A DNA stretch of 64,000 bases from Haliotis rufescens (taxonomy: Eukaryota), in assembly GCF_023055435.1 (NCBI RefSeq), contig NW_025964372.1, positions 8,060,001-8,124,000 of the forward strand, read 5' to 3'. Shown in pieces: positions 1 through 53,650 of this stretch. The notes beneath the pieces were generated by a model. That model had not been told where the DNA came from, searched no databases, and was given only the letters and a program-made list of their open reading frames with translations. Numbering within the stretch: position 1 is the first letter of the stretch; every line of letters begins with the position of its first letter. The translations under genes were made by a program, and so were the position numbers.

Positions 1-2016
1 TCAAGGATGGAGTGGTGCTGTAGTTTAAGGCTGGCAGTGAACTATTTTCTTCGGATACTGTATCCATGAAAACAAATTTAGAATATATTGGAATTTGACG
101 TCATACCTTTTGCATACAGAAAAACGATGGAAGTTGAAATTTGTTTTGCGTTCTTAAACCAATACAGTATGTACATACCTGGGAGAGTGATATATAAGAC
201 ATTGATGCCACGACCAACAATAGAGGCGTCACTATGGAAACACAACTGGAAACTGTCCGTACTGTTGACTGAAAAACCAACATGGTACAATCAATCATTA
301 TTAAGTAAGTTGCTGATTGGAGTATAATGCAAGATGTCTATTTAGTGTTGTTGCAATGGTGAGTCTTACAGCACATGACAAACCGGTAGATTGATAGGTT
401 TGTGTAAGGTTTCTATATCTGAATAAGGTATTGTTGATAAACAAGTATTTCTATATGGCCATTTTAAAAACAATTTGACGGATAAGTACTTTGAGCATAT
501 AAATATAAAACGTATATGGTAATAGTGTGCCACTGACTACTCGATGTGAATATTGTTGTATATCCTTGAGGTATACTGCCGCAACGTGTTGCGTTGACAA
601 CGGAGTCAGGCTTGTGAATTCTAACACTTTGCAAAACAAAGAGAAGAAAAGAAAACCAAAAGAAAATATATTCTTCCTTACACGATCTAATGTATCCGAA
701 ATCTTTCGTGCCACAGTCGATCTCGGTAATACCGTCACTTGTTCCATAGGTAACATAGTCATAACTGCAGCGAGGACCTTGCTCAATGTCAAAGACACTA
801 AACTCCAGATCGACCGTGAAAGAACCGCCAAAGTAAGGACGGAGCTCGAAGCAGCAGTCTTCGTTGTTTTGGTATTGACCAGAGCCAAACTCTATCTCTC
901 CAATGAGATCTTCCCTCACGCCCCCAACACATCCTGAACATCATGGAAGATTATTTGAACACATTTTAATAAACGGACTGAACATATATGTTATCAAAAT
1001 ATGTGCTGGTCTTCATGTAGATCTTAGTTCTCGTTGTACCTCTCTTTCAACTGCAAGGTCCATCCTCAGGTAAAATACCCATGAATGATAGGTCCCTGTT
1101 GAACGATATCATAAACACGTTCATGTATATTCACTTGATGTATTAATAGAGGTACATATTGTATTCATCAAAATATCATCAGACTTCAAACTATGAACTA
1201 ATTGATCAAAACTCATTGAAATATATACACCTTGAAATCATTTAAATATTCATATACTTTTTTTTATTTTCATTTTTATTTGTGTGAAATAACCACATTG
1301 AAATGTAGAAACCGGAATCGGTTAACGTAGATTAGTCCAAACAGTTCGGGCGTTTCATATTTAGCTGCGTTTTCATTTTTTAGCTCGTTAAAGCTGTGAA
1401 CTTACTACTTCCAGCTTGTCGCTTGAACCGTGCTTTCTCATTCTGTTGGAGAAAAATAATATATATTGACTGTGGATGTATGAAGCACCCATAAAGGTAT
1501 GGTTTGTATAGTAAACGGCTTTTTGATAACCTCAGTATGATCTCATGACATTGCAAAATATCACTCATTAAAAAAACGCTTTAAAAGTTTTAACAGCCAA
1601 GAATTCTTGATCTTTTTAGCCGAACACGACTTATAAACTATACATAACATAAGTGTGAACAATGACATTACGTGTCTCGTTCTGCAATAGAGATCTAGAT
1701 TATCTACTCAAAAGAAGTTAAGTAACATCCAATTCTTTTATATTTCTACAATTATTTATCGTTGCATGACAGAATGGATATTTTGCTCTCTGTAACTGGC
1801 GTACTGTTGTTTGTCACAGTTGTAAGCTATGAGTTGAATGACGACCAACTGCAGTTGTACTGAAGAGGACAGTAACACAGTTTATGTGTAAATCATGGCA
1901 TTCGGTACAACGTTAGATAAGTTGCCGCGTACTACACTTACTTTGAATGCTCTTCCTTCTGTGGAGGCCAGACAGAGGCAAACCACCAGCAAGCTGATCA
2001 CTGCACGTGGAGACAT
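1..2016 (-). CDS. Secreted 4xCUB glycoprotein, paralog 1 (5' part; runs off window). Exons 1942-2016, 1406-1442, 682-933, 179-268, 1-57 (partial)
   Basis: Exons nearly identical to paralog 3 (offset ~51.5 kb). Signal peptide MSPRAVISLLVVCLCLASTEG, micro-exon NEKARFKRQAGS, CUB1 (C..YQNNEDC..FDIE..CSYDYV..CG..FHSDASIVGRG), GT-AG sites in phase. Confidence 0.88.
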
Positions 2017-2054
2017 CTTGATGTACTCTGTACCTCCAGACAATTGCTGAAACT

Positions 2055-2061
2055 TATATAG
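2055..2061 (-). promoter_or_regulatory. TATA box (TATATAA) of CUB paralog 1
   Basis: TATATAA on minus strand about 40 nt upstream of ATG; conserved in all three paralogs. Coordinates +/- a few nt. Confidence 0.6.
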
Positions 2062-3010
2062 TCTCCGAGCTTCAAGAAATTAAAGATGCATGTTGATTTT
2101 CAGTAACGTCGATAACGTGGGTAGCGTCCGACATTCTGGAACAGTGCTAATTGTGTGACCACCCACTGGAAATCCGATTGCACATATACCAACAGGACCA
2201 TCTGCAGAATTTGATATCACAGACGCTGATGGTCACTATTGACATACCATTACTCTACAGATATTGATATGTTGAAGACATTCACAATCAGCAAAAATAC
2301 CACGTGGTAACTACGTGATAACCTCGTGTTAAGTAAAAGTTTGTTCTACAAGGCTGAAGGCGTATCTGGTCTAGAGACAATAGACAAGTGTGCGAAGAAG
2401 GGTGGTATGTTTCTAATGTTTTCCCAAACTATATACTAGTATGTCCAAAAGTTATTATTGATAACTGAAAAGTAAAACTTTCGTATGTTTTTCTTCGACT
2501 GTGTACACATGTAAAGAAAACGATTACTTAATGTAACTGGACATAATGGAAAGCCTGACCGATATTCAGTCTAAAAATTCATAATATGAAAAATATGATT
2601 TTTGAAACAGTCACTTATTATGTCTTTGTATGTAATGTGCTATGTTGATGGTGGGACACGTGGTTCTGTTGGGTGTTTCAACAGGACGGCAGCGAACATA
2701 TGGGGTATCACTCCCCACTCACCACTCATAGAGGAAAGACTGTTTGTTGGAGGAAAATGAGATTCTTGCAACCTTTGATTGTAGTCTCTTCATTGTTTAT
2801 CCTGAAATCAAATTGGGTCGTTATTGTTTGCCAGGCAATACGGAATTAATAGATATTTTCAATTTGCTGTGCAAGATATCCCAAGTCAGTATTTTTAAAC
2901 TCTTTGTTCCTGCAAGTGTGAAGTATGGCTTTGGCTATGTTTACATTTATATTTCAGACAACGCTGACGTTCGTACTTGATATACCAATATGGACGAAAA
3001 GGTATAAGGC

Positions 3011-3987
3011 GTGTTACAACCCTCAATGTAAAAATTACTCTTAATGAAAAAAAAATGACATTAATGGTTACGGGTTAACTCTTGTTACAACCCTTAATGT
3101 AAACATTACTCTTAATATAAACATATATTACATTAAGGGTTGCGGGTTCACCCTTGTTATAACTCTTAATGTACAAAAATACTTTTACATTAAGGGTTGA
3201 AATGGTAGATAATATTGTTTTTACATTAAGGGTTATCACTATGAAATAATACTTATCGAACTTTCATGCAACTTCGCAGATTTAATTGATCGTTACTTTG
3301 TCTAGATGTGCAAATGACTAATAATTTTTCCTACTCTACAACGACCTCCTGGTTGTTATATTCAGGCTTCATAACCGATTTGTATCAAACTTACTAATAA
3401 CAAAGGTTATTTTTCGATACTCTGCAAGGTAACCTCGTGACTATCCTAATACCGTAACGACGGAAAGGAGGACTCAGCCCAAGCAGATCAGACCAAGTTG
3501 TAGATGATGGTTGGTTGTTAGAATGGTCTATTAACAGAGTTTTAGGCATAAAATAATGGACTTTTTCTTGCAGTATTACGGATATGACAGTTAAGCATAC
3601 ACCAGAATCAAATGTTATTACAAACGACTGGAATTCCAATGCAATGGTGTTTGGTTAGAATAAGAAACCGTAGGTTTCCCAAGTACCGTGCCGAGTCAAA
3701 TATAGCCACTTAAAAGTTATATTTTTCGGATATGCAGTTTCTATAGCAGTTAAGCAGATCTTGTAGTAAGACCATTGTTGATTGAAGAAGAATTAGGCAT
3801 ACGGCCTGTAGAGTATTTCATGTCAGTTAGGGATCGACCATTCGATCTTCTGGGGGAGCTGACATATAAGCTATAAAAAGATAATTTTTACATTAAGGGT
3901 TGCGGGTTGTTACTCTCAATGAATTATTTTTTTTACATTAAGATTTAACGCATAAACCTTAATGTAAAGGCGCCACAAAGTGCTGTT
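3011..3987. mobile_element. Truncated non-autonomous CMC-like DNA element with ACAACCCTTAATGTAA subterminal repeats (also ~36805-37718, ~54645-55621)
   Basis: Motif acaacccttaatgtaaa / ttttacattaagggttg repeated in both orientations at both ends. The unit-2 copy ends in ...GTTGCTGTG (CACAGC terminus). Left terminus is missing. Confidence 0.55.
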
Positions 3988-4480
3988 AAGAGTTGCGTTC
4001 CTTATTTGTTCCAGGTTCAGCTGGTTGTACTTCGAATCCCAGATTCGCCCTGAGTATAAGCTTTGGCCTTATTTTCAAAATAAATAGAATTACTTGTAGT
4101 GTACATGAACGAAACTGAACGAGTCATACGTGCTTACACCAAGTACTACTCATACCCGTGAGATATACAAAAATGTATTTAATTTGGTCTTTTGCCCAAA
4201 TAAAATTTACGAATTGAGATGCCTTGGGTCCACAGAGTAGAGACACAATATGTAAGTGAAATGTTTTCTACAATACAGAACGCGTTGAATATACAAGGCT
4301 GTATCATTAAGTAATTCGGAATTATTTGTAAACATTAGAATAGGTACTGAAAGATAAATTGATAACAAATAATATTGGCTGAGTAATTTATACCTGTCCA
4401 AACTGAAACTGCATAGGTCGTGCGTGATATTGGTCTTCATCGGCGTTCCGACAACAGTTTACATATTCTTCCTGTTTTAT

Positions 4481-24543: not shown

Positions 24544-24546
24544 TTT

Positions 24547-28541: not shown

Positions 28542-31500
28542 TTATGCCACTGCGTAAAAGAAAATAGGAATATCAGTTAAAAAGTATGTGTCAGTGTATC
28601 TTGTTTACAAAACAACCCCACATCACATTTATATGATCACTTTGATTGTGGATTCCACAATTGTAAAGATAGTTTTATGTTTACGTTTTTGAAACAAAGA
28701 AATTGGTTAAATAATATTTAAGACTTGAATTTATGGGCACTTCTATACAAATATACTTGTATTACCAGATCCATATTGTTTACTAGTATATGTGCGAAGC
28801 TCACCTGGCGATGATGTGAAGGACATGTAGAAACCTTCCCTTTGCACGGAGCCGTCAGATGTGAAGGTGATCACAAAGGTTCCATCAGATTCTGAGCAGC
28901 AATAAACATAAAGTTACTGGAAGTACTAATACAGGTTTTACAGAAAAAAATTCATATGTGAATGTATGCTAGCTTTAGGTTTTTATTTTTAATCTTAAAA
29001 TACTTCAAAGTAACTAAAACTGTTTCTATTTTAGTGTTTCTTGTTCATCAGAAATGAACGGAAAGCAGAAATGATAAACATGTAACCGAAATTATAGAGG
29101 TGGAAAGTGAGCTACACTCACGGTATGTCTTGCTGCCGGGGTTGCTTCCACACAGTCTGTCTTCGCCCATGGTAACGGCGTCGTACATGCATCTGCTTGC
29201 ACTCTCAATGTCAAATTCCTCGAAGGTGAAGTGGAGTTCAGCTGGCGTGGGAGTGTTGATGGTGTATGTGCATGCCATGTTGGGACTGTAGCCACCAGGG
29301 GGAGTTGCGAATGACCCGGATGTACCATTGATCACAGCATTACAGTACTCTGAATTCGATAAAAAGGCAGAACATCCTAAAAGTAGTTTCATGTCCTTAG
29401 TTTTGTGTCATTGACCACACGAAACTGAGCTTGGGATCGTTGGATCAAACAAGTGTCTCTCCTGTTAATGAGGGCTTGGGGTTATTAAAAGTGCAATGCC
29501 AAGGAGGAAAGCAGAATAATGCTTGTGAGGTGATATTCGCCTGTTTGGCTGAGATGAAATCAACTTGAAACTTGGTCCCAACAATTCATTTTAAAATGAT
29601 CAGAGTATTTGTTCATCTGAATTGTCTCTGGGGCATGATACAATGATAAATATACGTTAATGTAAACAGTTTATTAATAACCACTGATTAGGTATGTGAT
29701 GCGAAGGTTGTACTTGCCTACTTCAGTCTGGTAGTCGAATGCGAAACCGAGACCCGAAACACTCGAATCACTGACGAATGTCATGGCGAGGAGTGGTTCT
29801 GCGTTAGAGTCTGGATTATAGAAATCTTTATCAGATAACAGAGGAGTTGAATTTATAAAAGTGATGTGAAAATTTTTGTTTCTGTCATCTCAAGTATACC
29901 AATATCAGAGCGGGGGACACAAATATGCAGAAACTAAAAGGCGATTTCAGAAGACACATGCATAAATGTACTAATGTACCTGTGTTAACATTGATATTAA
30001 CACTTGCAGTGAGCTTACATTGCTTCACGAAGGGACTTCTGTTGTTTCCACATAGTGTGTCGATGGTGTTGTTTCCAAGCCTCACTGACAGGCTGTCGTA
30101 ACGACAGTTGCTATTATATTCAACATCAAAGCGTGTGAAATTGATCGTGGTCACGTGGGGAAGAGCAGGTGAATATAGATTGATGCGGCACTCTTCGTTG
30201 TTTGCGTAGAAACCATCAATATCAGTTGCCAGAGATATTCTGCCTTCGAGGGAGGCAGTGTCGTAGTTGCAGGCTGCAATGAGAGATGGGAACTTGCATC
30301 ATTATACACGTTTGCCAACTCTCAAATGAAGTAACTTTGGGGACAAACTCTTGCTCTGGTCATCTATGTTTTCCTTGGGCTTTTCCACTAAATAAAGTTG
30401 ACGTCATGCATGTAACAGCACAACTGAAGGCAGAACTGCGAGTTTCTTTCCTCTAAAAATAACACATGAGTCACAATGTGTGGGATATATTGACAAGGCC
30501 CAAATCCTGTGTCATAAATATGGAAATTATTATGAAAGTATAAATAATTATAAAAACACACAAAAAACCGTTTACATGACTCACGGGTTGTTTATGATCA
30601 TAATAGTATTGTCCTGGAACCGTATGACTTCAAGGTTCCATAAAGAACCATACTCTGATCAAGGAATTAAACTTTGTCCCGTGTTTGTAGGAAAATGCAA
30701 ATAATATGCATTTAGAAAATCATAACATAGCGGGTGGCTTTTGTTCAACAATTCATTCCTTTTAATATTTCAGTTGCTGAAACCAAATTCCTCTTCATCT
30801 TATAAGCGACGTGAACGAACATATTTACAAGATCCCACTGCCCCCATCAACTATCTATTTAACAGCTAAATGTGTCCATCAAAGCTCCACATATTGAGAC
30901 TATAAATTTCCTTTACCCATGAAGGCTTTATTTGTGTGTAAGAAGACAATGACCTACCATTTGTTGTTTCGTCGGAAGGTTCCACGGTTGTGTTGCTTTG
31001 TGCGACTGTCGTGTTGCTTGGTGCGACTGTCGTGTTTCCTGGTGCGGCTGTCGTGTTGCCTGGTGCGACTGTCGTGTTGCCTGGTGCGACTGTCGTGTTG
31101 CCTGGTACGACGGTCGTGTTGCTTGGTGCGACGGTCGTGTTGCCTGGTGCGACGGTCGTGTTGCCTGGTGCGACGGTGGTGTTGCTTGGTGCGACGGTCG
31201 TGTTGCCTGGTGCGACGGTCGTGTTGCTTGGTGCGACGGTCGTGTTGCCTGGTGCGACGGTCGTGTTGCCTGGTGCGACGGTCGTGTTGGCTGGTGCGAC
31301 GGTCGTGTTGCCTGGTGCGACTGTCGTGTTGGCTGGTGCGACTGTTGTGTTCGGAGATGTTCCATTTTCTTAAGTAAAGTAAAATGTAAAGGGAAAACGA
31401 CTCAATAATAACTTGTGTGTGAATACATACACACAGTTATGATTCATGAGATGACAAAACACATATCTTAAATGATCTTCGTATTCAGAAGTTTGTTATT

Positions 31501-34500
31501 AAATGGTAAATCTTCTGACAACGTTTTGACGAACTCACGAACTCGATCATATATCTTTTTCATAGCCAGCCATTCAGAAGTGTATCGTACCCATCCTGAT
31601 GTTGAAGCGAGCCACAAAACCTCTGCTTGTCACTGAACCGTCGGTGACAAATCTCAGCACAACCTCACCAGTTCCGTTCACTGTAACAGAAACAGTGGAA
31701 CCTATTGACAAGAGAGCCCAATTCAAAATAAATATCTGGTGAAGGTTTTGATTTCATGTAGTGCGTTACTACAACGTTGAACTCTCATTTGATATCGACC
31801 ACTTCTCTGAGCTTACCTTGCCTCCCGTTAATTGTACTTCCACACCATCTTCGTCCACCATTGATCTGAACATAATCGTAGGGACATCCATTACCGCCCT
31901 CGAGGTCGAAGGTGGTGAAGTTGAAGTGAATACTGCTGTTCCTGGGCACATTGAAGACGTAGCTGCAGTTGAGGTTGTTCTGGTAGTCCTCCCCTGTACC
32001 AGGCAGGCTCTGGATCATGCCTTGGTCAGCAAGGGTAGAGAAGGTGCAGTTGCGATGGCTCCTGGGAACACCCCCTTAAACACAAAGATAGGCTTCTATC
32101 AGGGGAAGACAGCTCAATAGTCTTGTAGCATGTATGTTTGCATGTTGTCATTCAATGCATGGGACATGGACGACGACATCTCGTCAATTCAGAATACAGT
32201 CATATCATAAATTACTCGAAATAAGTCTGATGTATTCATAAAAATCCGTACAAAGAGGGAAATATAGCATGGCCTAGGACATACATAACCGAATCTCACT
32301 GTGAAATGTTGGACTTCCTCATACATGTATATAATATCTGTGTGAAATGTAGACAAGTCGTAGGCATCCCCATGGGTACCAGTTGTCCTCGAAATTACCT
32401 CATCTGTTTTTTATGCATACGAGTCAGGATTTATGCTCGGATTGGCAAAATGAAAACACGGAAATTTGGCCAAAAAGTATAACTTACGCTTCAGGTATAT
32501 GAATGATCTCATATCTTTGAATATTTGTCAAATAACCAATTACCTTCCACTGATTTGCTCACCTGAGCCGGAAATAATAGATACCAGTGAAACCACTACA
32601 TCTGTTTCATATTTAGATATATGCATAATAATTCAGTATTCACAATACTACGATACGAGCGAGCAATATTACAATGTTTATCTCCATTTCACAATCAAGC
32701 ATCCTTTTTCTCCTAAGATTTCGAAGAGCGTCATACGACTCTTGCTCAAAGGTTGTTTTTTTCAGGGTTAATACAGTCATGGCATCAGTAAAACTTTCAA
32801 AATATTTATGGTAGGATATCTAAAAAAATGATGTATGATGCAATTCCTTATTTCATTTGTATCATATGTACCTGTTTGTTTCAGATGAGCATATGACTTG
32901 TCTTTGCATGTGTTTGTGATGGTGTCAGTCGGTTACGCTCATCTGTTCGTTAACACCTAGTATCCTCACTATTTGGAAGTGGTTAATAAAACATGCTTAT
33001 GATATGATCGGAATCTCAGAATGGACTTATCGTTATGGAAAAGCCCTTTTTTCATTCAAATAAATATTCAAATGCTATCCTGTCCGCTCTGTGGTTCAAC
33101 GTTCTACTTAAACCTACTGACGAAAAGCTGGTCGGGAAGAGTAGTTGTCACGATTTGTGTCTTCATTTTCGATGAGACAAAGTTCAGTGAAAACGGAAAA
33201 GTTTCTTGTTTCATATATAGCCTTTAAAATCAACTATGAAACTATATTTACGAGATTCATTTCCGGTGGTTTCGGGAGAAGATGTTGCATTGTTGTAGGG
33301 AAAGGTAAAATTCGGTGAAGACGAGTTTGTCACGTTCAAGGACGGAGTGGTGCTGTAATTCAGGGAAGGCGAGGCTGTCACGTTCAAGGACGGAGTGGTG
33401 CTGTAGTTCAGGGAAGGCGAGGCTGTCACGTTCAAGGACGGAGCGGTGCTGTAGTTCAGGGAAGGCGAGGCTGTCACGTTCAAGGACGGAGCGGTGCTGT
33501 AGTTCAGGGAAGGCGAGGCTGTCCCGTTCAAGGACGGAGCGGTGCTGTAGTTCAGGGAAGTCGAGGCTGTCACGTTCAAGGACGGAGCGGTGCTGTAGTT
33601 CAGGGAAGGCGAGGCTGTCACGTTCAAGGATGGAGTGGTGCTGTAGTTTAAGGCTGGCAGAGAACTATTTTCTTCAGATACTGTATCCATGAAAACAAAT
33701 TTAGAATATGTTGGAATTTGACGTCATACCTTTTGCATACAGAAAAACGATGGAAGTTGAAATTTGTTTTGCGTTCTTAAACCAATACAGTATGTACACA
33801 CCTGGGAGAGTGATATATAAGACATTGATGCCACGACCAACAATAGAGGCGTCACTATGGAAACACAACTGGAAACTGTCCGTACTGTTGACTGAAAAAC
33901 CAACATGGTACAATCATTCATTATTAAGTAAGTTGCTGATTGGAGTATAAAACAAGATGTCTATTTAGTATTGTTGCGATGGTGAGTCTTTCAGCACATC
34001 ACAAACAGGTAGATTGATAGGTCTGTGTAAGGTTTCTATATCTGAATAAGGTATTGTTGATAAACAAGTATTTCTATATGGTCATTTAAAAAACAATTTG
34101 ACGGATTAGTACTTTGAGCATATAAATATAAAACGTATATCGTAATAGTGTGCCACTGACTACTCGATGTGAATATTGTTGTATATCCTGGAGGTATACT
34201 GCCGCAACGTGTTGCGTTCACAACGGAGTCAAGCTGGTGAATTCTAACACTTTGCAAAACAAAGAATTGAAAAGAAAACCCAAAGAAAATATATTCTTCC
34301 TTACACGATCTAATGTATCCGAAATCCTTCGTGCCACAGTCGATCTCGGTAATACCGTCACTTGTTCCATAGGTAACATAGTCATAACTGCAGCGAGGAC
34401 CTTGCTCAATGTCAAAGACACTAAACTCCAGATCGACCGTGAAAGAACCGCCAAAGTAAGGACGGAGCTCGAAGCAGCAGTCTTCGTTGTTTTGGTATTG

Positions 34501-35818
34501 ACCAGAGCCAAACTCTATCTCTCCAATGAGATCTTCCCTCACGCCCCCAACACATCCTGAACATCATGGAAGATTATGTGAACACATTTTAATAAACGGA
34601 CTGAACATATATGTTATCAAAATATGTGCAGGTTTTCATGTAGATCTTAGTTCTCGTTGTACCTCTCTTTCAACTGCAAGTTCGGTCCTCAGGTAAAATA
34701 CCCATGAATGATAGGTCCCTGTTGAACGATATCATAAACACATTCATGTATATTCACTTGATGTATTATTAGAGGTACATATTGTATTCATCAAAATATC
34801 ATCAGACTTCAAACTATGAACTCATTGATCAAAACTCAATGAAATATATACACCTTGAAATCATTTAAATATTCATATACTTTTTTTCATTTTCATTTTT
34901 ATTTGTGTGAAATAACCACATTGAAATGTAGAAACCGGAATCGGTTAACTAATGACGCTTTGTAACTGTTAACATAGATTTTGGACCACTTTTTCAAATA
35001 CTTCCTCAGCTTCTTTGCATCACATAATACGACTTGCGACCGTCAGAAGAAAAATGCAGTGTTCTTGTCCCAACTGTTCAACAGGTACATATTTATCAAA
35101 ACTCGATCAATGTTATACGTAGATAAGTCCAAACTGTTCGGGATATCTGATGGCGTTTCATATTTAGCTGCGTTTTCATTTTTTAGCCCGTTAAAGCTGT
35201 GAACTTACTACTTCCAGCTTGTCGCTTGAACCGTGCTTTCTCATTCTGTTGGAGAAAAATAATATATATTGACTGTGAAGCCTCCATAAAGATATGGTTT
35301 GTATATTCAACGGCTTTTTGATAACCTCAGTATGATCTCATGACACTGCAAAATATCACTCCATAAAAAATCGCTTTAAAAGTTTTAACAACCCAGAATT
35401 CTTGATCTTTTTAGCCGAACACGACTTATAAACTATACATAACATAAGTGTGAACAATGACATTACGTGTCTCGTTCTGCAATAGAGGTCTAGATTATCT
35501 ACTTAAAAGAAGTTAAGTAACATCCAATTCTTTTATATTTCTACAATTATTTATCGTTGCATGACAGAGTGGATATTTTGCTCTCTGTAACTGGCGTACT
35601 GTTGTTTGTCACTAAGAGTTGTAAGCTATGAGTTGAATGACGACCAACTGCAGTTGTCCTGAAGTGGACAACTTAATGTCAGTTAATGTGTAAATCATGG
35701 CATTCGGTACAACGTTAGATAAGTTGCCGTGTACTACACTTACTTTGAATGCTCTTCCTTCTGTGGAGGCCAGACAGAGGCAAACCACCAGCAAGCTGAT
35801 CACTGCACGTGGAGACAT
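28542..35818 (-). CDS. Secreted 4xCUB glycoprotein, paralog 2, 777 aa. Exons 35744-35818, 35209-35245, 34305-34556, 33802-33891, 33252-33680, 31817-32074, 31591-31701, 30958-31368, 30019-30273, 29718-29810, 29122-29349, 28805-28891, 28542-28549
   Basis: Exons sum to 2334 nt and stay in frame. Signal peptide, RFKR, four two-exon CUB domains with conserved Cys, FD.E, YD and (S/T)D.S motifs, two Asn/Thr/Ser/Pro repeat exons, no transmembrane segment. Ends SSPVA*. Confidence 0.9.
30975..31352 (-). repeat. 21-bp coding VNTR (NTTVAP[S/G/A]), ~18 units
   Basis: Direct count within exon 8; one N-T-T sequon per unit. Confidence 0.95.
32290..32830 (+). mobile_element. Decayed Penelope-like reverse transcriptase fragment in intron 5 (paralog ~50450-50950)
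   Basis: RQVVGIPMGT, LF..YE, FRY(M/I)NDL.SLN, EIIDTSE..VSYLDI motifs with frameshifts. Confidence 0.7.
33325..33652 (-). repeat. 48-bp (2x24) coding VNTR (LNYST[A/T]PS-LNVTASPS), 7 dimers
   Basis: Read from ORF 33211-33690; one N-x-S/T sequon every 8 aa. Confidence 0.95.
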
Positions 35819-45999: not shown

Positions 46000-48900
46000 T
46001 TATGCCACTGCGTAAAAGAAAATAGGAATATCAGTTAAAAGGTATGTGTCAGTGTATCTTGTTTACAAAAAAACCCACATCAAATATGATAAATTTGATT
46101 GTGGATTCCACAATTTGTAAAGATAGTTTTATGTTTACGTTTTTGAAACAAAGAAATTGTTAAAAATTATATTTTAGACTTGAATTTATGGACACTTCTA
46201 TACAAATAAACTTGTATTACCGGATCCATATCGTTTACTAGTATATGTGCGAAGCTCACCTGGCGATGATGTGAAGGACATGTAGAAACCTTCCCTTTGC
46301 ACGGAGCCGTCAGATGTGAAGGTGATCACAAAGGTTCCATCAGATTCTGAGCAGCAATAAACATAAAGTTACTGGAAGTACTAATACAGGTTTTACAGAA
46401 AGAAATTCATATGTGAAAGTATGCTAGGTTAAGCGTTTTATTTTTAATCTTAAAATACGTCAAAGTAACTAAAACTGTTTCTATTTTAGTGTTTCTTGTT
46501 CATCAGTTGTTTCAAGGTCACGGAAAGCAGAAATGATGAACATGTAACAGAAATTACAGAGGTGGAAAGTGAGCTACACTCACGGTATGTCTTGCTGCCG
46601 GGGCTGCTTCCACACAGTCTGTCTTCGCCCATGGTGACGGCGTCGTACATGCATCTGCTTGCACTCTCAATGTCAAATTCCTCGAAGGTGAAGTGGAGTT
46701 CAGCTGGCGTGGGAGTGTTGATGGTGTATGTGCATGCCATGTTGGGACTGTAGCCACCAGGGGGGGTTGCGAATGACCCGGATGTACCATTGATCACAGC
46801 ATTACAGTACTCTGAATTCGATAAAAAGGCAGAACACCCTAAAAGTAGTTTCATGTCCTTAGTTTAGTGTCATTGACCAGACGAAACTGAGCTTGGGATC
46901 TTGGGGTCAAACAAGTGTCTCTCCTGTTAATGAGGGCTTGGGGTTATTAAAAGTGCAATGCCAAGGAGGAAAGCGGAATAATGCTTGTGAGGTGATATTC
47001 GCCTGTTTGGCTGAGATGAAATCAATTTGAAAGTTCGTCCAACAATTCATTTTAAAATGATCACAATATTTGTTCATCTGAATGGTCTCTGGGGCATGAT
47101 ACAATGATAAATATACGTTAATGTAAATGGTTTATTAAGTATGTGATGCGAAGGTTGTACTTGCCTACTTCAGTCTGGTAGTCGAAGGCGAAACCGAGAC
47201 CCGAAACACTCGAATCACTGACGAATGTCATGGCGAGGAGTGGCTCTGCGTTAGAGTCTGGATTATAGAAATCTTTATCAGAAAACAGAGGAGTTGAATT
47301 TATAAAAGTGATGTGAAAAATCTTGTTTCTGTCATCTCAAGTATACCAATATAAGGGCGGGGGACACAAATATGCATATGCTAAAAGGCGATATCAGAAG
47401 ACACATGCATAAATGTACTAATGTACCTGTGTTAACATTGATATTAACACTTGCAGTGTGCTTACATTGCTTCACGAAGGGACTTCTGTTGTTTCCACAT
47501 AGTGTGTCGATGGTGTTGTTTCCAAGCTTCACTGACAGGCTGTCGTAACGACAGTTGCTATTATATTCAACATCAAAGCGTGTGAAGTTGACCGTGGTCA
47601 CGTGGGGAAGAGCAGGTGAATATAGATTGATGCGGCACTCTTCGTTGTTTGCGTAGAAACCATCAATACCAGTTGCCAGAGATATTCTGCCTTCGAGGGA
47701 GGCAGTGTCGTAGTTGCAGGCTGCAATGAGAGATGGGAACTTGCATCATTATACACGTTTGCCAACTCTCAAATCAAGTAACTTTGGGGACAAACTCTTG
47801 CTCTGGTCATCTATGTTTTCCTTGGGCTTTTCCACTAAATAAAGTTGACGTCATGCATGTAACAGCACAACTGAAGGCAGAACTGCGAGTTTCTTTCCTC
47901 TAAAAATAACACATGAGTCACAATGTGTGGGATATATTGACAAGGCCCAAATCCTGTGTCATAAATATGGAAATTATTATGAAAGTATAAATAATGATAA
48001 AAACACACAAAAACCGTTTACATGACTCACAGGTTGTTTATGATCATAATAGTATTGAGCTGGAACCGTACAACTTCAAGCTTCCATAAAGAACTATACC
48101 CTGATCAAGGAATTAAACTTTGTCCCGTGTTTGTAGGAAAATGCAAATAATATGCATTTAGAAAATCATAACATAGCGGGTGGCGTTTGTTCAACAATTT
48201 GTTCCTTTTTAATATTTCAGTTGCTGAAACCAAATTCCTCTTCATCTTATAAGCGACGTGACACCAACATATTTACAAGACCCTACTGCCCCCATCAACT
48301 AACTATTTAACAGCTAAATGTGTCCATCAAAGCTCCACATATTTAGACGATGAATTTCCTTTTCAGATGAAGGCTTTATTTGTGTGTAAAATGACAATGA
48401 CCTACCATATGTTGTTTCGTCGGAAGGTTCCACGGTTGTGTTGCTTTGTGCGACTGTCGTGTTGCTTGGTCCGACTGTCGTGTTTCCTGGTGCGACGGTC
48501 GTGTTGCCTGGTGCGACTGTCGTGTTTCCTGGTGCGACTGTCGTGTTGCCTGGTGCGCCTGTCGTGTTTCCTGGTGCGACTGTCGTGTTGCCTGGTGCGA
48601 CGGTCGTGTTGCTTGGTGCGACGGTCGTGTTGCTTGGTGCGACGGTCGTGTTGCTTGGTGCGACGGTCGTGTTGCCTGGTGCGCCTGTCGTGTTGCTTGG
48701 TGCGACTGTCGTGTTGCCTGGTGCGACTGTCGTGTTGCTTGGTGCGACTGTCGTGTTGCCTGGTGCGACGGTCGTGTTGCTTGGTGCGACGGTCGTGTTG
48801 CTATGTGCGACTGTCGTGTTGCCTGGTGCGCCTGTCGTGTCGCTTGGTGCGATGGTCGTGTTGCCTGGTGCGACGGTCGTGTTGCCTGGTGCGACTGTCG

Positions 48901-51900
48901 TATTGCTTGGTGCGACGGTCGTGTTGCCTGGTGCGACGGTGGTGTTCATTGGTGCGACGGTGGTGTTGCTTGGTGCGACGGTGGTGTTGCTTGGTGCGAC
49001 GGTCGTGTTGCCTGGTGCGACGGTGGTGTTTCCTGGTGCGACGGTCGTGTTGCCTGGTGCGACTGTCGTGTTTGCTGGTGCGACTGTCGTGTTGCCTGGT
49101 GCGACGGTCGTGTTGCTTGGTGCGACTGTCGTGTTGCTTGGTGCGACGGTCGTGTTTCCTGGTGCGATGGTCGTGTTGCCAGGTGCGACTGTCGTGTTGC
49201 TTGGTGCGACGGTCGTGTTGCTTGGTGCGACGGTCGTGTTGCCTGGTGCGACGGTCGTGTTGCTTGGTGCGACGGTCGTGTTGCCTGGTGCGACGGTCGT
49301 GTTGCCTGGTGCGACGGTGGTGTTGCTTGGTGCGACGGTCGTGTTGCTTGGTGCGACGGTCGTGTTGCTTGGTGCGACGGTCGTGTTGCTTGGTGCGACG
49401 GTCGTGTTTCCTGGTGCGATGGTGGTGTTGCCTGGTGCGACGGTGGTGTTGCTTAGTGCGACGGTCGTGTTGGCTGGTGCGACTGTTGTGTTCAGAGATG
49501 TTCCATTTTCTTAAGTAAAGTAAAATGTAAAGGAAAAAAGATAAAAAGACTCAAATATAACTTGTGTGTGAATACATACACACAGTAATGAGTCATGAGA
49601 TGACAAAACACATATCTTCAATGATCTTCGTATTCAGAAGTCTGTTATTTAATGGTAAATCTTCTGACAACGTTTTGACGAACTCACGAACTCGATCATA
49701 TATCTTTTTCATAGCCACACATTCAGAAGTGTATCGTACCCATCATGATGTTGAAGCGAGCCACAAAACCTCTGCTTGTCACTGAACCGTCAGTGACAAA
49801 TCTCAGCACAACCTCACCAGTTTCGTTCACTGTAACAGAAACAGTGGAACCTATTGACAAGAGACCCAAATCAAAATAAATATCTAGTGAAGGTTTTGAT
49901 TTCATGTAGTGCGTTACTACGACGTTGAACTCTCATTTGATATTGACCACTTCTCTGAGCTTACCTTGCCTCCCGTTAATGGTACTTCCACACCATCTTC
50001 GTCCACCATTGATCCGAACATAATCGTAGGGACATCCATTACCGCCCTCGAGGTCGAAGGTGGTGAAGTTGAAGTGAATACTGCTGTTCCTGGGCACATT
50101 GAAGACGTAGCTGCAGTTGAGGTTGTTCTGGTAGTCCTCCCCTGTACCAGGCAGGCTCTGGATCATACCATGGTCAGCCCGGGTAGAGAAGGTGCAGTTG
50201 CGATGGCTCCTGGGAACACCCACTAAAACACAAAGATAGGCTTCTATCAGGGGAAGACAGCAGAATAGTCTTGTAGCATGTATGTTTGCATGTTGTCATT
50301 CAATGCATGGGACATGGACGACGACATCTCGTCAATTCAGAATACAGTCATATCATAAATTACTCGAAATAAGTCTGATGAATTCATAAAAATCCGTACC
50401 AAGAGGGAAATATAGCATGGCCTAGGAAATGCATAACCGAATCTCTGTCATAAATGTGAAATGTTGGACTTTCTCATACATGTATAAAATATCTGTGTGA
50501 AATGTAGACAAGTAGTAGGCAACCCCATGGGTACCAGTTGTCCTCGAAATTACCTCATCTGTTTTTAATGCATACGAGTCAGGATTTATGCTCGGGTATA
50601 TAACTTACGCTTCAGGTATATTAATGATTTCATATCTTTGAATAATTGTCAAATAACCAATTACCAATTACCTGATTTGCTCACCAGAGCCGGAAATAAT
50701 AGATACCAGTGAAACCGCTACATCTGTTTTATATTTAGATATATGCATAATCAGTAATCACAATACTACGATACGAGCGAGCAATATTACAATGTTTATC
50801 TCCATTTCTCAATCAAGCATGCTCTTTCTCCTAAGATTTTGAAGAGCGTCATACGACTCTTGCTCAAAGGTTTTTTTTTCAGGGTTAATACAGTCATGGC
50901 ATCAGTAAAACTTTCAAAAGTTTTATGGTAGGATATCTAAAAAAATGATGTTTGATGCAATTCCTTATTTCAGTTGTATCATATGTACCTGTTTGTTTCA
51001 GATGAGCATATGACTTGTCTTTGCATGTGTTTGTGATGGTGTCAGTCGGTTACGCTCATCTGTTCGTTAACACCTAGTATCCTCATTATTTGGAAGTGGT
51101 TCATAAACACATGCTTATGATATGATCGGAATCTCACAATGGGCTTATCGTTATGGAAAAGTTGTTTTTTTTCATTCAAATAAATATTCAAATGCTTTCC
51201 TGTCCGCTCCGTGGTTCAACGTATTACTTAAACCCACTGACGAAAAGCTGGTCGGGAAGAGTAGTTGTCACGATTTGTGCCTTCATTTTCGATGAGACAA
51301 AGTTCAGAGAAAGGGAAAAGTTTCTTGTTTCATATATAGCCTTAAAATCAACTATGAAACTATATTTACGAGATTCATTTCCGGTGGTTTCGGGAGAAGA
51401 TGTTGCATTCAGGGAAGGCGAGGCTGTCACGTTCAAGGACGGAGCGGTGCTGTAATTCAGGGAAGGCGAGGCTGTCACGTTCAAGGATGGAGTGGTGCTG
51501 TAGTTTAAGGCTGGCAGAGAACTATTTTCTTCGGATACTGTATCCATGAAAACAAATTTAGAATATATTGGAATTTGACGTCATACCTTTTGCATACAGA
51601 AAAACGATGGAAGTTGAAATTTGTTTTGCGTTCTTAAACCAATACAGTATGTACATACCTGGGAGAGTGATATATAAGACATTGATGCCACGACCAACAA
51701 TAGAGGCGTCACTATGGAAACACAACTGGAAACTGTCCGTACTGTTGACTGAAAAACCAACATGGTACAATCAATCATTATTAAGTAAGTTGCTGATTGG
51801 AGTATAATGCAAGATGTCTATTTAGTGTTGTTGCAATGGTGAGTCTTACAGCACATGACAAACCGGTAGATTGATAGGTCTGTGTAAGGTTTCTATATCT

Positions 51901-53650
51901 GAATAAGGTATTGTTGATAAACAAGTATTTCTATATGGCCATTTTAAAAACAATTTGACGGATAAGTACTTTGAGCATATAAATATAAAACGTATATGGT
52001 AATAGTGTGCCACTGACTACTCGATGTGAATATTGTTGTATATCCTTGAGGTATACTGCCGCAACGTGTTGCGTTGACAACGGAGTCAGGCTTGTGAATT
52101 CTAACACTTTGCAAAACAAAGAGAAGAAAAGAAAACCAAAAGAAAATATATTCTTCCTTACACGATCTAATGTATCCGAAATCCTTCGTGCCACAGTCGA
52201 TCTCGGTAATACCGTCACTTGTTCCATAGGTAACATAGTCATAACTGCAGCGAGGACCTTGCTCAATGTCAAAGACACTAAACTCCAGATCGACCGTGAA
52301 AGAACCGCCAAAGTAAGGACGGAGCTCGAAGCAGCAGTCTTCGTTGTTTTGGTATTGACCAGAGCCAAACTCTATCTCTCCAATGAGATCTTCCCTCACG
52401 CCCCCAACACATCCTGAACATCATGGAAGATTATTTGAACACATTTTAATAAACGGACTGAACATATATGTTATCAAAATATGTGCTGGTCTTCATGTAG
52501 ATCTTAGTTCTCGTTGTACCTCTCTTTCAAATGCAAGGTCCATCCTCAGGTAAAATACCCATGAATGATAGGTCCCTGTTGAACGATATCATAAACACGT
52601 TCATGTATATTCACTTGATGTATTAATAGAGGTACATATTGTATTCATCAAAATATCATCAGACTTCAAACTATGAACTAATTGATCAAAACTCATTGAA
52701 ATATATACACCTTGAAATCATTTAAATATTCATATACTTTTTTTATTTTCATTTTTATTTGTGTGAAATAACCACATTGAAATGTAGAAACCGGAATCGG
52801 TTAACTAATGACGCTTTGTAACTGTTAACATAGATTTTGGACCACTTTTTCAAATACTTCCTCAGCTTCTTTGCATCACATGATACGACTCGCGACCTTC
52901 AGAAGAAACATTCAGGGTCCTTGTACCAACACATCTATCAAAACTCGATCAATGTTATACGTAGATTAGTCCAAACAGTTCGGGCGTTTCATATTTAGCT
53001 GCGTTTTCATTTTTTAGCCCGTTAAAGCTGTGAACTTACTACTTCCAGCTTGTCGCTTGAACCGTGCTTTCTCATTCTGTTGGAGAAAAATAATATATAT
53101 TGACTGTGGATGTATGAAGCACCCATAAAGGTATGGTTTGTATATTCAACGGCTTTTTGATAACCTCAGTATGATCTCATGACACTGCAAAATATCACTC
53201 ATTAAAAAAACGCTTTAAAAGTTTTAACAGCCAAGAATTCTTGATCTTTTTAGCCGAACACGACTTATAAACTATACATAACATAAGTGTGAACAATGAC
53301 ATTACGTGTTTCGTTCTGCAATAGAGATCTAGATTATCTACTCAAAAGAAGTTAAGAAACATCCAATTCTTTTATATTTCTACAATTATTTATCGTTGCA
53401 TGACAGAATGGATATTTTGCTCTCTGTAACTGGCGTACTGTTGTTTGTCACAGTTGTAAGCTATGAGTTGAATGACGACCAACTGCAGTTGTACTGAAGA
53501 GGACAGTAACACAGTTTATGTGTAAATCATGGCATTCGGTACAACGTTAGATAAGTTGCCGCGTACTACACTTACTTTGAATGCTCTTCCTTCTGTGGAG
53601 GCCAGACAGAGGCAAACCACCAGCAAGCTGATCACTGCACGTGGAGACAT
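46000..53650 (-). CDS. Secreted 4xCUB glycoprotein, paralog 3, 921 aa. Exons 53576-53650, 53040-53076, 52162-52413, 51659-51748, 51370-51537, 49965-50222, 49740-49850, 48406-49509, 47466-47720, 47165-47257, 46584-46811, 46260-46346, 46000-46007
   Basis: Same exon structure as paralog 2; 2766 nt in frame; only exons 5 and 8 change length. Confidence 0.9.
48423..49493 (-). repeat. 21-bp coding VNTR (NTTVAP[S/G]), ~51 units
   Basis: Exon 8 is 1104 nt versus 411 nt in paralog 2, a difference of exactly 33 x 21 nt. Confidence 0.95.

What the first reader, a model, noticed from the sequence alone, without database searches (positions are those of the whole stretch)
1..53650. Tandem family of secreted 4xCUB proteins spaced by two N-glycan 'bottle-brush' linkers
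Seen: three paralogs with architecture SP-propeptide-CUB-[8-aa sequon repeat]-CUB-[7-aa sequon repeat]-CUB-CUB and no transmembrane or catalytic domain. Each repeat unit carries one N-x-S/T (NYS, NVT, NTT), none with Pro at x. Known: typical mucin spacers are O-glycosylated PTS tracts, so strictly periodic N-sequons are less usual. Inference: a multivalent cross-linking or adhesion protein (mucus, egg coat, shell matrix or immune agglutinin) whose reach and glycan load are tuned by VNTR length. I do not recognise a named gene with this layout.
Basis: partly seen in the sequence, partly recalled or inferred. Interest (0 to 1): 0.8.

Follow-up and report, generated by a model that had tools for sequence, protein, structure and literature searches.

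The report
Abalone secreted CUB proteins, sugar-site linkers
The window holds part of a large tandem array of red abalone genes, transcribed and spliced, that encode secreted proteins made of four CUB binding domains joined by repeat linkers carrying one N-glycosylation site every 7 or 8 residues; the family is real and unusual, but its biological role is still unknown.

Summary
The window (Haliotis rufescens, contig C594 8.060-8.124 Mb) carries two complete minus-strand genes and the 5' end of a third. The layout is signal peptide, RxKR propeptide, CUB, 8-residue sequon repeat, CUB, 7-residue NTT repeat, CUB, CUB.

Contigs of RNA-like runs show GT-AG joints for 9 of 12 introns. Loose ends place two more. 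Both repeat exons are joined to their neighbours. Copy 2 equals the public model XP_048245008.1 ("cubilin-like", 770 aa).

The array is larger than the window: 11 loci on 8.01-8.24 Mb, 7 of them intact canonical copies. A sister cluster with Tyr-rich YPDYATA linkers lies at 8.30-8.50 Mb. The linker-2 exon runs from 411 to 1188 nt, always in steps of 21.

In 329 heptads the N-T-T positions have 170 synonymous and 7 nonsynonymous variants; positions 4-7 have 57 and 227. All four CUBs keep the acidic triad of Ca2+-binding CUBs.

Full-layout relatives were found only in Haliotis, and no characterised orthologue turned up. It is not cubilin.

Best reading: a multivalent, Ca2+-dependent cross-linker of an abundant secretion, with heavily glycosylated spacers. 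Tissue, site occupancy and ligands are untested.

The parts
35744..35818 (-). Copy 2 (A-type) exon 1: ATG and signal peptide MSPRAVISLLVVCLCLASTEGRAFK. A TATA-like TATATAAG lies at 35854-35861.
   Evidence: Sequence read, translation, GTAAGT donor. Identical to the N-terminus of P0002.
35209..35245 (-). Copy 2 exon 2: NEKARFKRQAGS, with a furin-type RFKR site (propeptide end).
   Evidence: The loose end of RNA contigs at 34556 maps here. AG/GT splice sites. RxKR is conserved in 7 of 7 family proteins checked.
34305..34556 (-). Copy 2 CUB1, first exon.
   Evidence: Pfam CUB E 2.6e-6. Joint 33891|34305 in X2 and X11.
33802..33891 (-). Copy 2 CUB1, second exon.
   Evidence: Joints 33680|33802 (X1) and 33891|34305 (X2, X11).
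33252..33680 (-). Copy 2 linker 1 exon: 8-aa (16-aa double) sequon repeat, 19 sequons, symmetric phase 1-1.
   Evidence: TRF. Joints 32073|33251 (cut +1) and 33680|33802. Counts.
31817..32074 (-). Copy 2 CUB2, first exon.
   Evidence: Pfam CUB E 9.7e-13. Joints 31680|31817 and 32073|33251.
31591..31680 (-). Copy 2 CUB2, second exon.
   Evidence: Joints 31368|31591 and 31680|31817.
30958..31368 (-). Copy 2 linker 2 exon: 7-aa NTTVAPG/S repeat, 19 sequons, symmetric phase 1-1.
   Evidence: TRF. Joints 30273|30958 (X1 2 contigs, X2 3 contigs) and 31368|31591. Counts.
30019..30273 (-). Copy 2 CUB3, first exon.
   Evidence: Pfam CUB E 2.4e-6. Joints 29810|30019 and 30273|30958.
29718..29810 (-). 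Copy 2 CUB3, second exon, followed by a GC-AG intron.
   Evidence: Joint 29349|29718 with ends CT..GC in 4 of 4 runs. The GC donor is kept in all 9 copies that have this exon.
29122..29349 (-). Copy 2 CUB4, first exon.
   Evidence: Pfam CUB E 1.7e-10. Joints 28891|29122 and 29349|29718.
28805..28891 (-). Copy 2 CUB4, second exon.
   Evidence: Joint 28891|29122. The loose end at 28805 maps to 28549. GTGAGC donor.
28542..28549 (-). Copy 2 last exon, coding part (..VA, stop). A poly(A) signal lies about 54 nt further on.
   Evidence: Matches the C-terminus ...FTSSPVA of P0002. Exon lengths sum to 2313 nt = 770 codons plus stop.
53576..53650 (-). Copy 3 (B-type) exon 1, signal peptide.
   Evidence: 100% identical to copy 2 exon 1 (coordinates corrected by one base).
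53040..53076 (-). Copy 3 exon 2, RFKR propeptide end.
52162..52413 (-). Copy 3 CUB1, first exon.
   Evidence: 100% identity to copy 2. Open, AG/GT.
51659..51748 (-). Copy 3 CUB1, second exon.
51370..51537 (-). Copy 3 linker 1 exon: short form, 168 nt, 7 sequons.
49965..50222 (-). Copy 3 CUB2, first exon.
   Evidence: 97.7% identity to copy 2. Open.
49740..49829 (-). Copy 3 CUB2, second exon.
48406..49509 (-). Copy 3 linker 2 exon: long form, 1104 nt, 51 sequons.
   Evidence: TRF 50.5 copies. Open, AG/GT, length a multiple of 3. Counts.
47466..47720 (-). Copy 3 CUB3, first exon.
47165..47257 (-). Copy 3 CUB3, second exon (GC donor).
46584..46811 (-). Copy 3 CUB4, first exon.
46260..46346 (-). 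Copy 3 CUB4, second exon.
46000..46007 (-). Copy 3 last exon, coding part.
1..2016 (-). Copy 1 (B-type), 5' part only: exon 1 at 1942-2016, exon 2 at 1406-1442, CUB1 exons at 682-933 and 179-268, and the first 57 nt of the linker 1 exon at 1-57. The rest lies left of the window.
   Evidence: The remainder was read in L003 and is intact, with a 1104-nt linker 2 exon.

Best explanation
These are real, transcribed members of a Haliotis-restricted tandem gene family.

The product. Each gene encodes a soluble secreted glycoprotein. After the signal peptide is removed and a furin-type cut is made at RxKR, the mature chain is CUB1, linker 1, CUB2, linker 2, then CUB3-CUB4 as a tight pair.

The CUBs. 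Each keeps the Glu/Asp/Asp triad and tyrosine of Ca2+-binding CUB domains. In solved complexes these clamp a lysine of the partner protein. In sea water the protein would therefore act as a four-headed, Ca2+-dependent binder.

The linkers. They are uncharged, free of cysteine and about half Ser/Thr/Pro, with one N-x-S/T every 7 or 8 residues. I read them as extended, densely N-glycosylated (probably also O-glycosylated) spacers that hold the heads apart, hydrate the molecule and protect it from proteases. Their lengths change by unequal exchange of 21-bp and 24/48-bp units, which gives paralogs different reach.

The role. The most likely one is cross-linking or coating in an abundant extracellular secretion, with mucus the leading candidate.

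Shown: gene structure, splicing, inclusion of the repeat exons, domain identity, the conserved triad, constraint on the sequon, and length variation among paralogs.
Inferred: secretion, the furin cut, glycan occupancy, the ligands, the tissue and the cross-linking role.
For: Transcription and splicing.
- Contigs of 4 of 4 runs cover exons only. Four intron bins (28897-29093, 30473-30866, 33034-33230, 34019-34215) have depth 0 in all four runs.
- 9 of 12 introns are seen as joints. Eight have GT-AG ends on the minus strand and one has GC-AG.
- Two more introns are placed by loose ends.
- The summed word depth on exons reaches 1e5 in run X5. This is a poor measure, but it points to abundance.

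Identity.
- Copy 2 equals XP_048245008.1, "cubilin-like" of Haliotis rufescens, 770 aa.
- Exon lengths sum to 2313 nt, and all internal introns from exon 2 onward are phase 1.

Domains.
- P0002 has 4 CUB stretches at 175.5 bits; its only other hits are two CUB-like models on the same stretches.
- Foldseek returns cubilin CUB5-8 at E 2.6e-23, then PCPE-1, neuropilin and MASP. The sequence match to PCPE-1 CUB1CUB2 is E 4e-17.
- FD[ILV]E, CxYD and [ST]DxS motifs are present in 4 of 4 CUBs and lie in shared columns of the four-CUB alignment (for CUB3 the first CxYD hit printed is the N-terminal CNYD, and CRYD is the aligned site). [quoted passage not shown]

Linkers.
- AF2 gives pLDDT 21-32 and almost no secondary structure (two 3-residue strands) for residues 154-301 and 412-548.
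- Sequon periodicity is far above shuffles.
- In 329 heptads from 8 copies, N-T-T has 170 synonymous and 7 nonsynonymous variants. Positions 4-7 have 57 and 227.
- N-T-T is also kept in H. cracherodii, H. asinina and H. rubra, while positions 4-5 differ (VA against FV).

Array.
- There are 10 CUB1 exons at 98% identity or more on 8.017-8.233 Mb, and an eleventh locus (L010) has no CUB1 exon.
- Of the 11 loci, 7 are intact canonical copies.
- Linker 2 exons measure 411, 453, 705, 1020, 1104 (two copies) and 1188 nt (two copies), all differing by multiples of 21.
Against: - No call shows the protein, its secretion, any glycan, any ligand or the tissue. Run labels were coded and marked "RNA? (a guess)".
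- All runs laid were contigs, so depth cannot rank expression. VNTR lengths in transcripts could not be read.
- Thr at the middle sequon position is as constrained as Asn and the third Thr (3 nonsynonymous of 329). N-glycosylation alone does not require that.
- PF21300 (grass antifreeze beta roll) passes its cut-off for the copy 3 linker (41.3 bits) and for relatives (up to 59.9 bits). AF2 drew periodic strands for the H. asinina relative. A folded rod is therefore not excluded.
- Heptads are copies of one another, so the synonymous/nonsynonymous counts are not independent events.
- One locus (L004) has frameshifts in both repeat exons. These are either decay or assembly error.
- Units that are more than 99% identical could be assembly duplicates.
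Confidence: 0.55

Rival explanations
1. The 7-residue repeat is not a floppy glycan brush. It is a folded beta-roll or beta-solenoid rod, as in the Lolium ice-binding protein. The Asn would form an internal ladder and stay unglycosylated, so the rod would be a rigid spacer or a surface-binding face.
For: - PF21300 scores above its cut-off of 30 bits for the copy 3 linker (41.3), P0005 (59.9), P0152 (41.6), P0156 (41.8) and P0151 (34.7).
- The single-sequence AF2 model of P0005 (NTTFVPG units) has 3-residue strands every 7 residues, with pLDDT 51-61, higher than its own CUBs.
- The weak Foldseek rows include beta-helix proteins and curli.
Against: - The Pfam score comes from summed weak matches. 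No single stretch passes for the window's gene, and an unrelated Ig-like family (PF22544) passes in the same way.
- The copy 2 linker reaches only 23.5 bits.
- AF2 with an alignment gives pLDDT 21-32 and almost no strands for the window's protein.
- Foldseek finds no match at E <= 0.001 for the P0005 model.
- Position 7 is 169 Gly, 139 Ser and 16 Ala of 329, which is loose for a tight turn.
- There is a Pro in nearly every unit.
Confidence: 0.12
2. The proteins are mucosal or humoral immune agglutinins, like DMBT1/gp340. The CUB heads would recognise microbes, and copy-number and linker diversity would be driven by pathogens.
For: - Beads-on-a-string layout.
- Large, recently duplicated, diversifying tandem array.
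- The automatic name "deleted in malignant brain tumors 1 protein-like" is given to a 272-aa member of the same 90% cluster as the short fragment model P0188.
- Generic CUB relatives named DMBT1-like appear among distant hits.
Against: - No SRCR, ZP, lectin or other recognition domain.
- CUB1 is 99-100% identical among copies, the opposite of a diversifying recognition head.
- No expression or challenge data were seen.
Confidence: 0.13
3. The proteins are reproductive: egg jelly or coat, or a sperm surface component used in gamete recognition.
For: - CUB proteins act in gamete interaction in other phyla (seen only as titles and abstracts in the listing).
- Rapidly evolving tandem families and repeat-length change are typical of abalone reproductive genes (recalled, from no call).
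Against: - No ZP module.
- The text searches for abalone with CUB or cubilin gave no gamete protein of this layout.
- Transcripts were found in runs of 3 studies and 2 organism labels, but tissue and sex are unknown.
Confidence: 0.08
4. The proteins are shell or periostracum matrix components secreted by the mantle.
For: - Secreted, repeat-rich, lineage-restricted proteins are typical of mollusc shell secretomes (recalled).
- The sister subfamily has Tyr-rich acidic heptads (YPDYATA) that could be cross-linked or bind mineral.
Against: - In the H. laevigata shell proteome paper PMC6003135 the word CUB occurs only inside a reference DOI in the main text.
- The linkers of the window's genes are uncharged (3-4 charged residues per exon), unlike acidic matrix proteins.
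Confidence: 0.07
5. The family is real, but the copy number is inflated. Some of the A+B gene-pair units that are more than 99% identical would be allelic haplotypes or mis-assembled repeats laid in tandem.
For: - Window 1-9699 matches 51481-61178 at 99.3-99.6%, and 17099-19923 matches 61176-64000 at 99.4%.
- L003 and copy 3 have the same 1104-nt linker exon.
- L004 has 1-2 nt indels in both repeat exons, as long-read errors would give.
Against: - The units differ by a 7.4-kb insertion (9700-17098).
- They also differ in linker length (411 against 453; 1104 against 1020) and in point differences.
- H. cracherodii also has several distinct models of 590, 816 and 886 aa on one contig.
Confidence: 0.15

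Closest known systems
Cubilin (the automatic public name of these genes is "cubilin-like")
   Same: Best sequence and fold match of the CUB domains: 3KQ4 cubilin CUB5-8, phmmer E 2.8e-21 and Foldseek E 2.6e-23. The Ca2+-type acidic triad is kept.
   Different: As described in PMC5368703 (passage), cubilin has 8 EGF and 27 CUB domains and is about 450 kDa. The abstract of PMC6283879 (listing) gives 460 kDa. Here there are 4 CUBs, no EGF, 770-914 aa and two VNTR linkers. A separate long cubilin-like protein of 3484 aa exists in Haliotis (P0006).
PCPE-1 (procollagen C-proteinase enhancer), CUB1CUB2 pair
   Same: CUB3-CUB4 aligns as a unit with PCPE-1 CUB1CUB2 (E 4.3e-17). PCPE-1 is a secreted, non-catalytic CUB protein whose Ca2+ sites clamp partner lysines (PMC6372009, passages).
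   Different: PCPE-1 has two CUBs and an NTR domain (the NTR is recalled). It has no sequon VNTR and no tandem gene array.
DMBT1 / gp340 and secreted mucins
   Same: Folded modules strung on Ser/Thr/Pro-rich repeat linkers of variable number. The linkers here are 47-51% S+T+P.
   Different: No SRCR, ZP, VWD or cysteine-knot domain. The repeat period is set by an N-x-S/T sequon, which is under the strongest constraint. A purely O-glycan PTS tract has no such requirement.
NTT-heptad linkers in other secreted proteins: Anopheles christyi GH18-domain protein (GGNTTVA units) and Oreochromis aureus "mucin-5AC-like" (NTTAAPS units)
   Same: Nearly the same heptad with one NTT per unit, in long arrays beside folded domains.
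   Different: The flanking domains are unrelated (GH18; PF03351) and so are the phyla, so this is most likely convergence. I found no functional description of them in the two text searches made.
Sister subfamily in the same genome (XP_048244915.1 and relatives)
   Same: Same signal peptide, RxKR site and CUB order, at 37-41% identity, on the same contig.
   Different: Linker 1 is a Tyr/Asp/Pro heptad (YPDYATA, tens of units) without sequons. These proteins have 6 to 8 CUBs, and the genes lie on the opposite strand at 8.296-8.503 Mb.

Membership tests
CUB domain proteins (PF00431) | Match to the family profile above its curated cut-off. | tested here: met
   P0002 scores 175.5 bits against a cut-off of 21.4, with 4 stretches. 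Exon by exon, four first-half exons score 28.2-48.8 bits.
CUB domain proteins (PF00431) | Beta-sandwich fold like solved CUB domains. | tested here: met
   The AF2 model has four all-beta domains with block-mean pLDDT about 52-87. Foldseek gives 127 matches at E <= 0.001, and those listed are nearly all CUB-containing chains.
Ca2+-binding subset of CUB domains | [quoted passage not shown] | tested here: met
   FD[ILV]E, CxYD and [ST]DxS motifs are found in 4 of 4 CUBs, in shared columns of the four-CUB alignment (the CxYD hit printed for CUB3 is the N-terminal CNYD, CRYD being the aligned site). They pair with the PCPE-1 sites. This is at sequence level only.
Ca2+-binding subset of CUB domains | Actual Ca2+ binding and lysine-dependent ligand capture. 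| not testable with these tools
   Needs recombinant protein.
Cubilin orthologue | EGF repeats followed by about 27 CUB domains in a protein of about 450 kDa (PMC5368703, passage). | tested here: not met
   4 CUBs, no EGF, 770 aa.
Gel-forming mucins | VWD / C8 / cysteine-knot oligomerisation domains flanking PTS repeats (recalled definition). | tested here: not met
   Only CUB and CUB-like families at E <= 0.001.
Mucin-domain glycoproteins in the wide sense | Ser/Thr/Pro-rich tandem repeats that are densely glycosylated. | tested here: inconclusive
   The composition fits (S+T+P 0.47-0.51). Glycosylation cannot be tested here.
DMBT1-type agglutinins | SRCR domains with interspersed linkers, plus CUB and ZP (recalled definition). 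| tested here: not met
   No SRCR and no ZP.
Grass ice-binding beta roll (PF21300) | Profile match above the cut-off together with a folded beta-roll. | tested here: inconclusive
   Copy 2 linker scores 23.5 bits, below 30. Copy 3 linker scores 41.3 bits, but no single stretch passes and an unrelated family also passes. AF2 shows disorder for P0002, periodic low-confidence strands for P0005, and no PDB match at E <= 0.001.

The most novel reading that the evidence does not exclude
The linkers would be a distinct kind of spacer, an "N-mucin". This is a VNTR whose selected unit is an N-glycosylation sequon, giving a brush of N-glycans rather than O-glycans. It would have evolved convergently in abalone, a mosquito GH18 protein and a fish mucin-like protein. 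In abalone it would be one of several interchangeable symmetric (phase 1-1) linker cassettes slotted between Ca2+-binding CUB heads; the Tyr-rich YPDYATA cassette would be another. A half-megabase gene cluster would then make a graded set of cross-linkers that sets the material properties of a major secretion.
Probability: 0.25. Interest if true: 0.65.

Novelty: new variant of a known kind. Interest (0 to 1): 0.45.

Why it matters
Abalone mucus, adhesion and surface secretions matter for aquaculture, larval settlement and disease, yet their protein makers are poorly known. This locus offers a concrete, abundantly transcribed candidate family.

The design is clean: four Ca2+-type CUB heads and two spacers whose length differs about threefold between neighbouring genes. 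That makes a long-standing idea directly testable, namely that repeat number sets the reach and glycan load of extracellular cross-linkers. Paralogs with 19 to 57 units can be compared side by side.

It also points to sequon-periodic repeats as a linker type that annotation pipelines mislabel. The automatic names seen here include "autotransporter adhesin BpaC-like", "mucin-12-like" and "cubilin-like".

Tried and rejected
Tissue of expression. I could not find it.
- Run, organism and study names were coded.
- A word search with the CUB1 exon for short transcript-derived fragments returned only one public model, P0188.
- A text search for six protein accession numbers found 0 papers.

Literature.
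- Searches: abalone + "CUB domain" (9 papers); Haliotis + cubilin (8); Haliotis + CUB as a whole word (536 papers, 40 listed); CUB domain + mucus + gastropod (5); abalone mucus proteomics terms (332 papers, 20 listed); sequon / tandem repeats / bottlebrush terms (9).
- None gave a protein of this layout.
- In five papers opened for the word CUB (PMC6003135, PMC11518883, PMC13229213, PMC11806381, PMC13544226) the word was only "j.cub" inside reference DOIs.
- PMC5368703 (passages) reports many "cubilin" isoforms in H. discus hannai Iso-Seq data, with clusters of 4.4-6.5 kb. I could not tie them to this family.
- PMC7333891 (passages) lists one limpet mucus protein with a single CUB among other domains. 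It is not comparable.
Shell, mucus and expression tables there may bear on the tissue question.

Rejected readings.
- Cubilin orthology (see the membership test).
- A membrane-anchored form: the model has no helix after residue 35.
- Chance ORFs: splicing is seen in the RNA contigs.

Other.
- The bacterial promoter/terminator scan was a misplaced call and says nothing here.
- The search of earlier findings by words gave nothing.
- I did not use the ESM Atlas search, the RNA-family tools or the third word search.

Full report
WHAT IS THERE

The window is G000:C594:8060001-8124000 of a 1.33-Gb assembly. The species is Haliotis rufescens, because the product of the central gene is identical to XP_048245008.1, "cubilin-like [Haliotis rufescens]".

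Tandem Repeats Finder gives two 21-bp arrays (30984-31351, 17.5 copies; 48432-49492, 50.5 copies) and two 48-bp arrays (33317-33648, 6.9 copies; 51407-51502, 2 copies). On the minus strand they encode NTTVAPG/S heptads and LNYSTAPS-LNVTASPS octad pairs.

Between them lie open frames that match the CUB profile exon by exon, at E 2.6e-6, 9.7e-13, 2.4e-6 and 1.7e-10 for the four first-half exons.

GENE MODEL AND TRANSCRIPTION

I laid contigs of four RNA-like runs (3 studies, 2 coded organism labels) on 28700-34600.

Depth sits on the predicted exons only. Four intron bins have depth 0 in all four runs.

Nine introns appear as joints. Eight have CT..AC ends and one has CT..GC, which read as GT-AG and GC-AG on the minus strand. 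The joints are 28891|29122, 29349|29718, 29810|30019, 30273|30958, 31368|31591, 31680|31817, 32073|33251, 33680|33802 and 33891|34305.

Both repeat exons are joined to the CUB exons on either side. None of the 15 joints shown skips a repeat exon entirely. Eleven further joints were not shown.

Loose ends at 34556 and 28805 map to 35209 and 28549. They give a 37-nt exon 2 and a small last exon. Intron 1 lay outside the stretch and rests on the sequence and on the public model.

The result is 13 exons. Their lengths sum to 2313 nt, that is 770 codons plus a stop, which is exactly the length of the public protein. Searches were made exon by exon, and whole-protein steps used the public protein P0002.

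All introns from exon 2 onward are phase 1, so each repeat exon is a symmetric cassette.

Other joints carry letters between their two sides. They fit other paralogs: a short linker 1 form, and the QPYDVTTY junction of the 1079-aa paralog P0001. Several family members are therefore transcribed.

Summed word depth on exons reaches 1e5 in run X5. The tool warns that this is a poor measure. I take it only as a hint of abundance.

THE PROTEIN

- The signal peptide is MSPRAVISLLVVCLCLAS... (h-region mean hydropathy 3.08).
- Next comes NEKARFKR|QAGS, with an RxKR site conserved in 7 of 7 family proteins checked.
- P0002 has four CUB stretches and no other kind of domain: its only other hits are two CUB-like models on the same stretches.
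- AF2 gives four beta-sandwich domains with block-mean pLDDT about 52-87. Helices occur only at residues 3-23 and 27-35.
- Foldseek and phmmer point to cubilin CUB5-8, PCPE-1, neuropilins and MASP/C1r/C1s.
- All four CUBs keep the Glu, Asp, Asp motifs and the tyrosine, in shared alignment columns. PMC6372009 describes these as the Ca2+ site of this CUB subset; in its PCPE-1 complex two of the acidic residues form salt bridges with partner lysines (passages).
- The two linkers (residues 154-301 and 412-548) have pLDDT 21-32 and almost no secondary structure, only two 3-residue strands.
- The linkers are cysteine-free and almost uncharged, and 47-51% Ser+Thr+Pro.
- Each linker carries 19 sequons in copy 2. 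Copy 3 carries 7 and 51. None has Pro at x. Shuffles give about 6-7 sequons, with a maximum of 14.
- P0002 has 48 sequons in all.

THE ARRAY

The CUB1 exon occurs 10 times at 98% identity or more on the minus strand between 8,016,750 and 8,232,931. I fetched ten 9.9-kb stretches and checked them exon by exon. With the window's two complete genes this gives 11 loci:

- 7 intact canonical copies: L002, L003, copy 2, copy 3, L005, L006 and L008.
- L004 has frameshifts in both repeat exons (427 and 412 nt).
- L001 is truncated. It has a stop in CUB1b and lacks CUB2, linker 2 and CUB3.
- L010 is an open three-CUB variant without CUB1 and linker 1.
- L007 with L009 is the 7-CUB paralog P0001.

Linker 2 exons measure 411, 453, 705, 1020, 1104, 1104, 1188 and 1188 nt in the eight open copies. 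All differ by multiples of 21. Linker 1 exons measure 429 (2 copies), 285 (1) and 168 (4) in the seven intact canonical copies. The truncated L001 also has a 168-nt exon, and L004 has 427 nt.

Two types alternate: long linker 1 with short linker 2, and the reverse.

Window 1-9699 repeats at 51481-61178 with 99.3-99.6% identity. The pair unit was therefore duplicated very recently, or in part by the assembler.

A sister cluster of 5 loci lies on the opposite strand at 8.296-8.503 Mb. It encodes proteins with the same head and CUB order, but with a YPDYATA heptad linker.

WHAT IS UNDER CONSTRAINT

In 329 in-register heptads from 8 copies, the counts of synonymous and nonsynonymous variants are:

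- Positions N, T, T: 2/2, 50/3 and 118/2.
- Positions 4-7: 16/32, 1/18, 10/17 and 30/160.

The NTT triplet is also kept in H. cracherodii, H. asinina and H. rubra relatives, where positions 4-5 are FV/FA/FI instead of VA.

This argues that the sequon is the selected element. Two cautions apply. The units are copies of one another, and the middle Thr is equally constrained, which N-glycosylation alone does not explain. Added O-glycosylation or sequon efficiency could account for it.

RELATIVES AND NAMES

The profile-free search of 1.84 billion representatives with the CUB1 exon gave 199 proteins at E <= 0.001. The four listed hits in which CUB1 sits right after the signal peptide and propeptide (residues 39/40 onward) are all Haliotis: P0001, P0002, P0004 and P0005. 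The nine lower hits whose names I looked up are generic multi-CUB proteins: 8 named cubilin-, DMBT1- or tolloid/BMP1-like and 1 unnamed.

The word search with P0002 found full-layout relatives only in H. cracherodii, H. asinina and H. rubra, under unrelated automatic names. The remaining hits matched the repeats alone.

Two of those remaining hits have nearly the same heptad: an Anopheles GH18 protein and a tilapia "mucin-5AC-like" protein. The linker type therefore recurs elsewhere.

No paper describing this layout was found. Supplements were closed.

HOW IT MOST LIKELY WORKS

The product is a secreted, furin-processed, four-headed Ca2+-dependent binder. Its heads are held apart by extended, heavily glycosylated spacers of paralog-specific length, and it cross-links or coats an abundant secretion.

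Shown are the structure, the splicing, the domains, the motifs, the constraint and the length variation. Secretion, cleavage, glycan occupancy, ligands and tissue are inferred.

RIVALS

- A beta-roll rod. PF21300 passes for the long linker, but only by summed weak matches, and an unrelated family passes in the same way. AF2 is negative for the window's protein and weakly periodic for the H. asinina relative.
- An immune agglutinin.
- A gamete protein.
- A shell-matrix protein.
- Assembly-inflated copy number.

VERDICT

The family is a new variant of a known kind: modular secreted CUB glycoproteins with mucin-like VNTR linkers. It is not a cubilin. Interest is moderate. It is a clean natural series for testing how repeat number tunes an extracellular cross-linker, but its function is still open.

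Noticed in passing
G000:C594 8,295,719-8,502,634 (+ strand), outside the window: Sister cluster of 5 loci encoding XP_048244915.1-type proteins. They have the same signal peptide, RxKR site and CUB order, but a Tyr/Asp/Pro heptad VNTR (YPDYATA, tens of units) in place of the sequon repeat. The Tyr next to Asp suggests sulfation or cross-linking (my inference).
   Followed up: partly
window 17687-23339 (-) and 61764-64000 (-): Ty3/gypsy-type LTR retrotransposon ORFs (PNMA-like gag, aspartyl protease, RT, RNase H, integrase). The two copies are 99.4% alike as part of the duplicated unit. Observed only.
   Followed up: partly
window 9700-17098: A 7.4-kb stretch present in the first duplicated unit but absent from the second: 1-9699 continues at 17099 in the copy at 51481-64000.
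   Followed up: no
window 4237-7108 and 38095-40975 (also 56455-58587): An intergenic block repeated upstream of each gene at 95-97% identity. It overlaps the place another reader noted as an LBP/BPI-like pseudogene (37719-39580). I did not examine it.
   Followed up: no
window 26705-27079 and 43698-43953: 54-bp tandem repeat (7 and 4.7 copies, about 80% matches) about 1.5-2 kb downstream of each complete gene. No coding reading was tested.
   Followed up: no
L004 (G000:C594:8130900-8140800): An otherwise 100% conserved A-type copy has a 2-nt loss in the linker 1 exon and a 1-nt gain in the linker 2 exon (427 and 412 nt). This is either a young pseudogene or assembly indels in the repeats.
   Followed up: partly
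L010 (G000:C594:8183000-8192900) and L001 (8009300-8019200): Rearranged family members. L010 keeps the signal peptide, propeptide, CUB2, linker 2 (705 nt), CUB3 and CUB4, all open. L001 keeps CUB1, linker 1 and CUB4, with a stop in CUB1b and a lost acceptor.
   Followed up: partly
window 29350-29717 and the same intron in 8 other copies: A GC-AG intron after the second CUB3 exon, kept in all 9 copies that have this exon and spliced in 4 of 4 runs. Low-depth contigs (6-17 against thousands) retain it with 23-24 mismatches.
   Followed up: partly
window 34305-34556 against 52162-52413 and 682-933: The 5' exons (signal peptide to CUB1) are 99.6-100% identical among copies, while the 3' exons are 96.7-98.7% identical. 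This suggests gene conversion or a mosaic duplication history.
   Followed up: no
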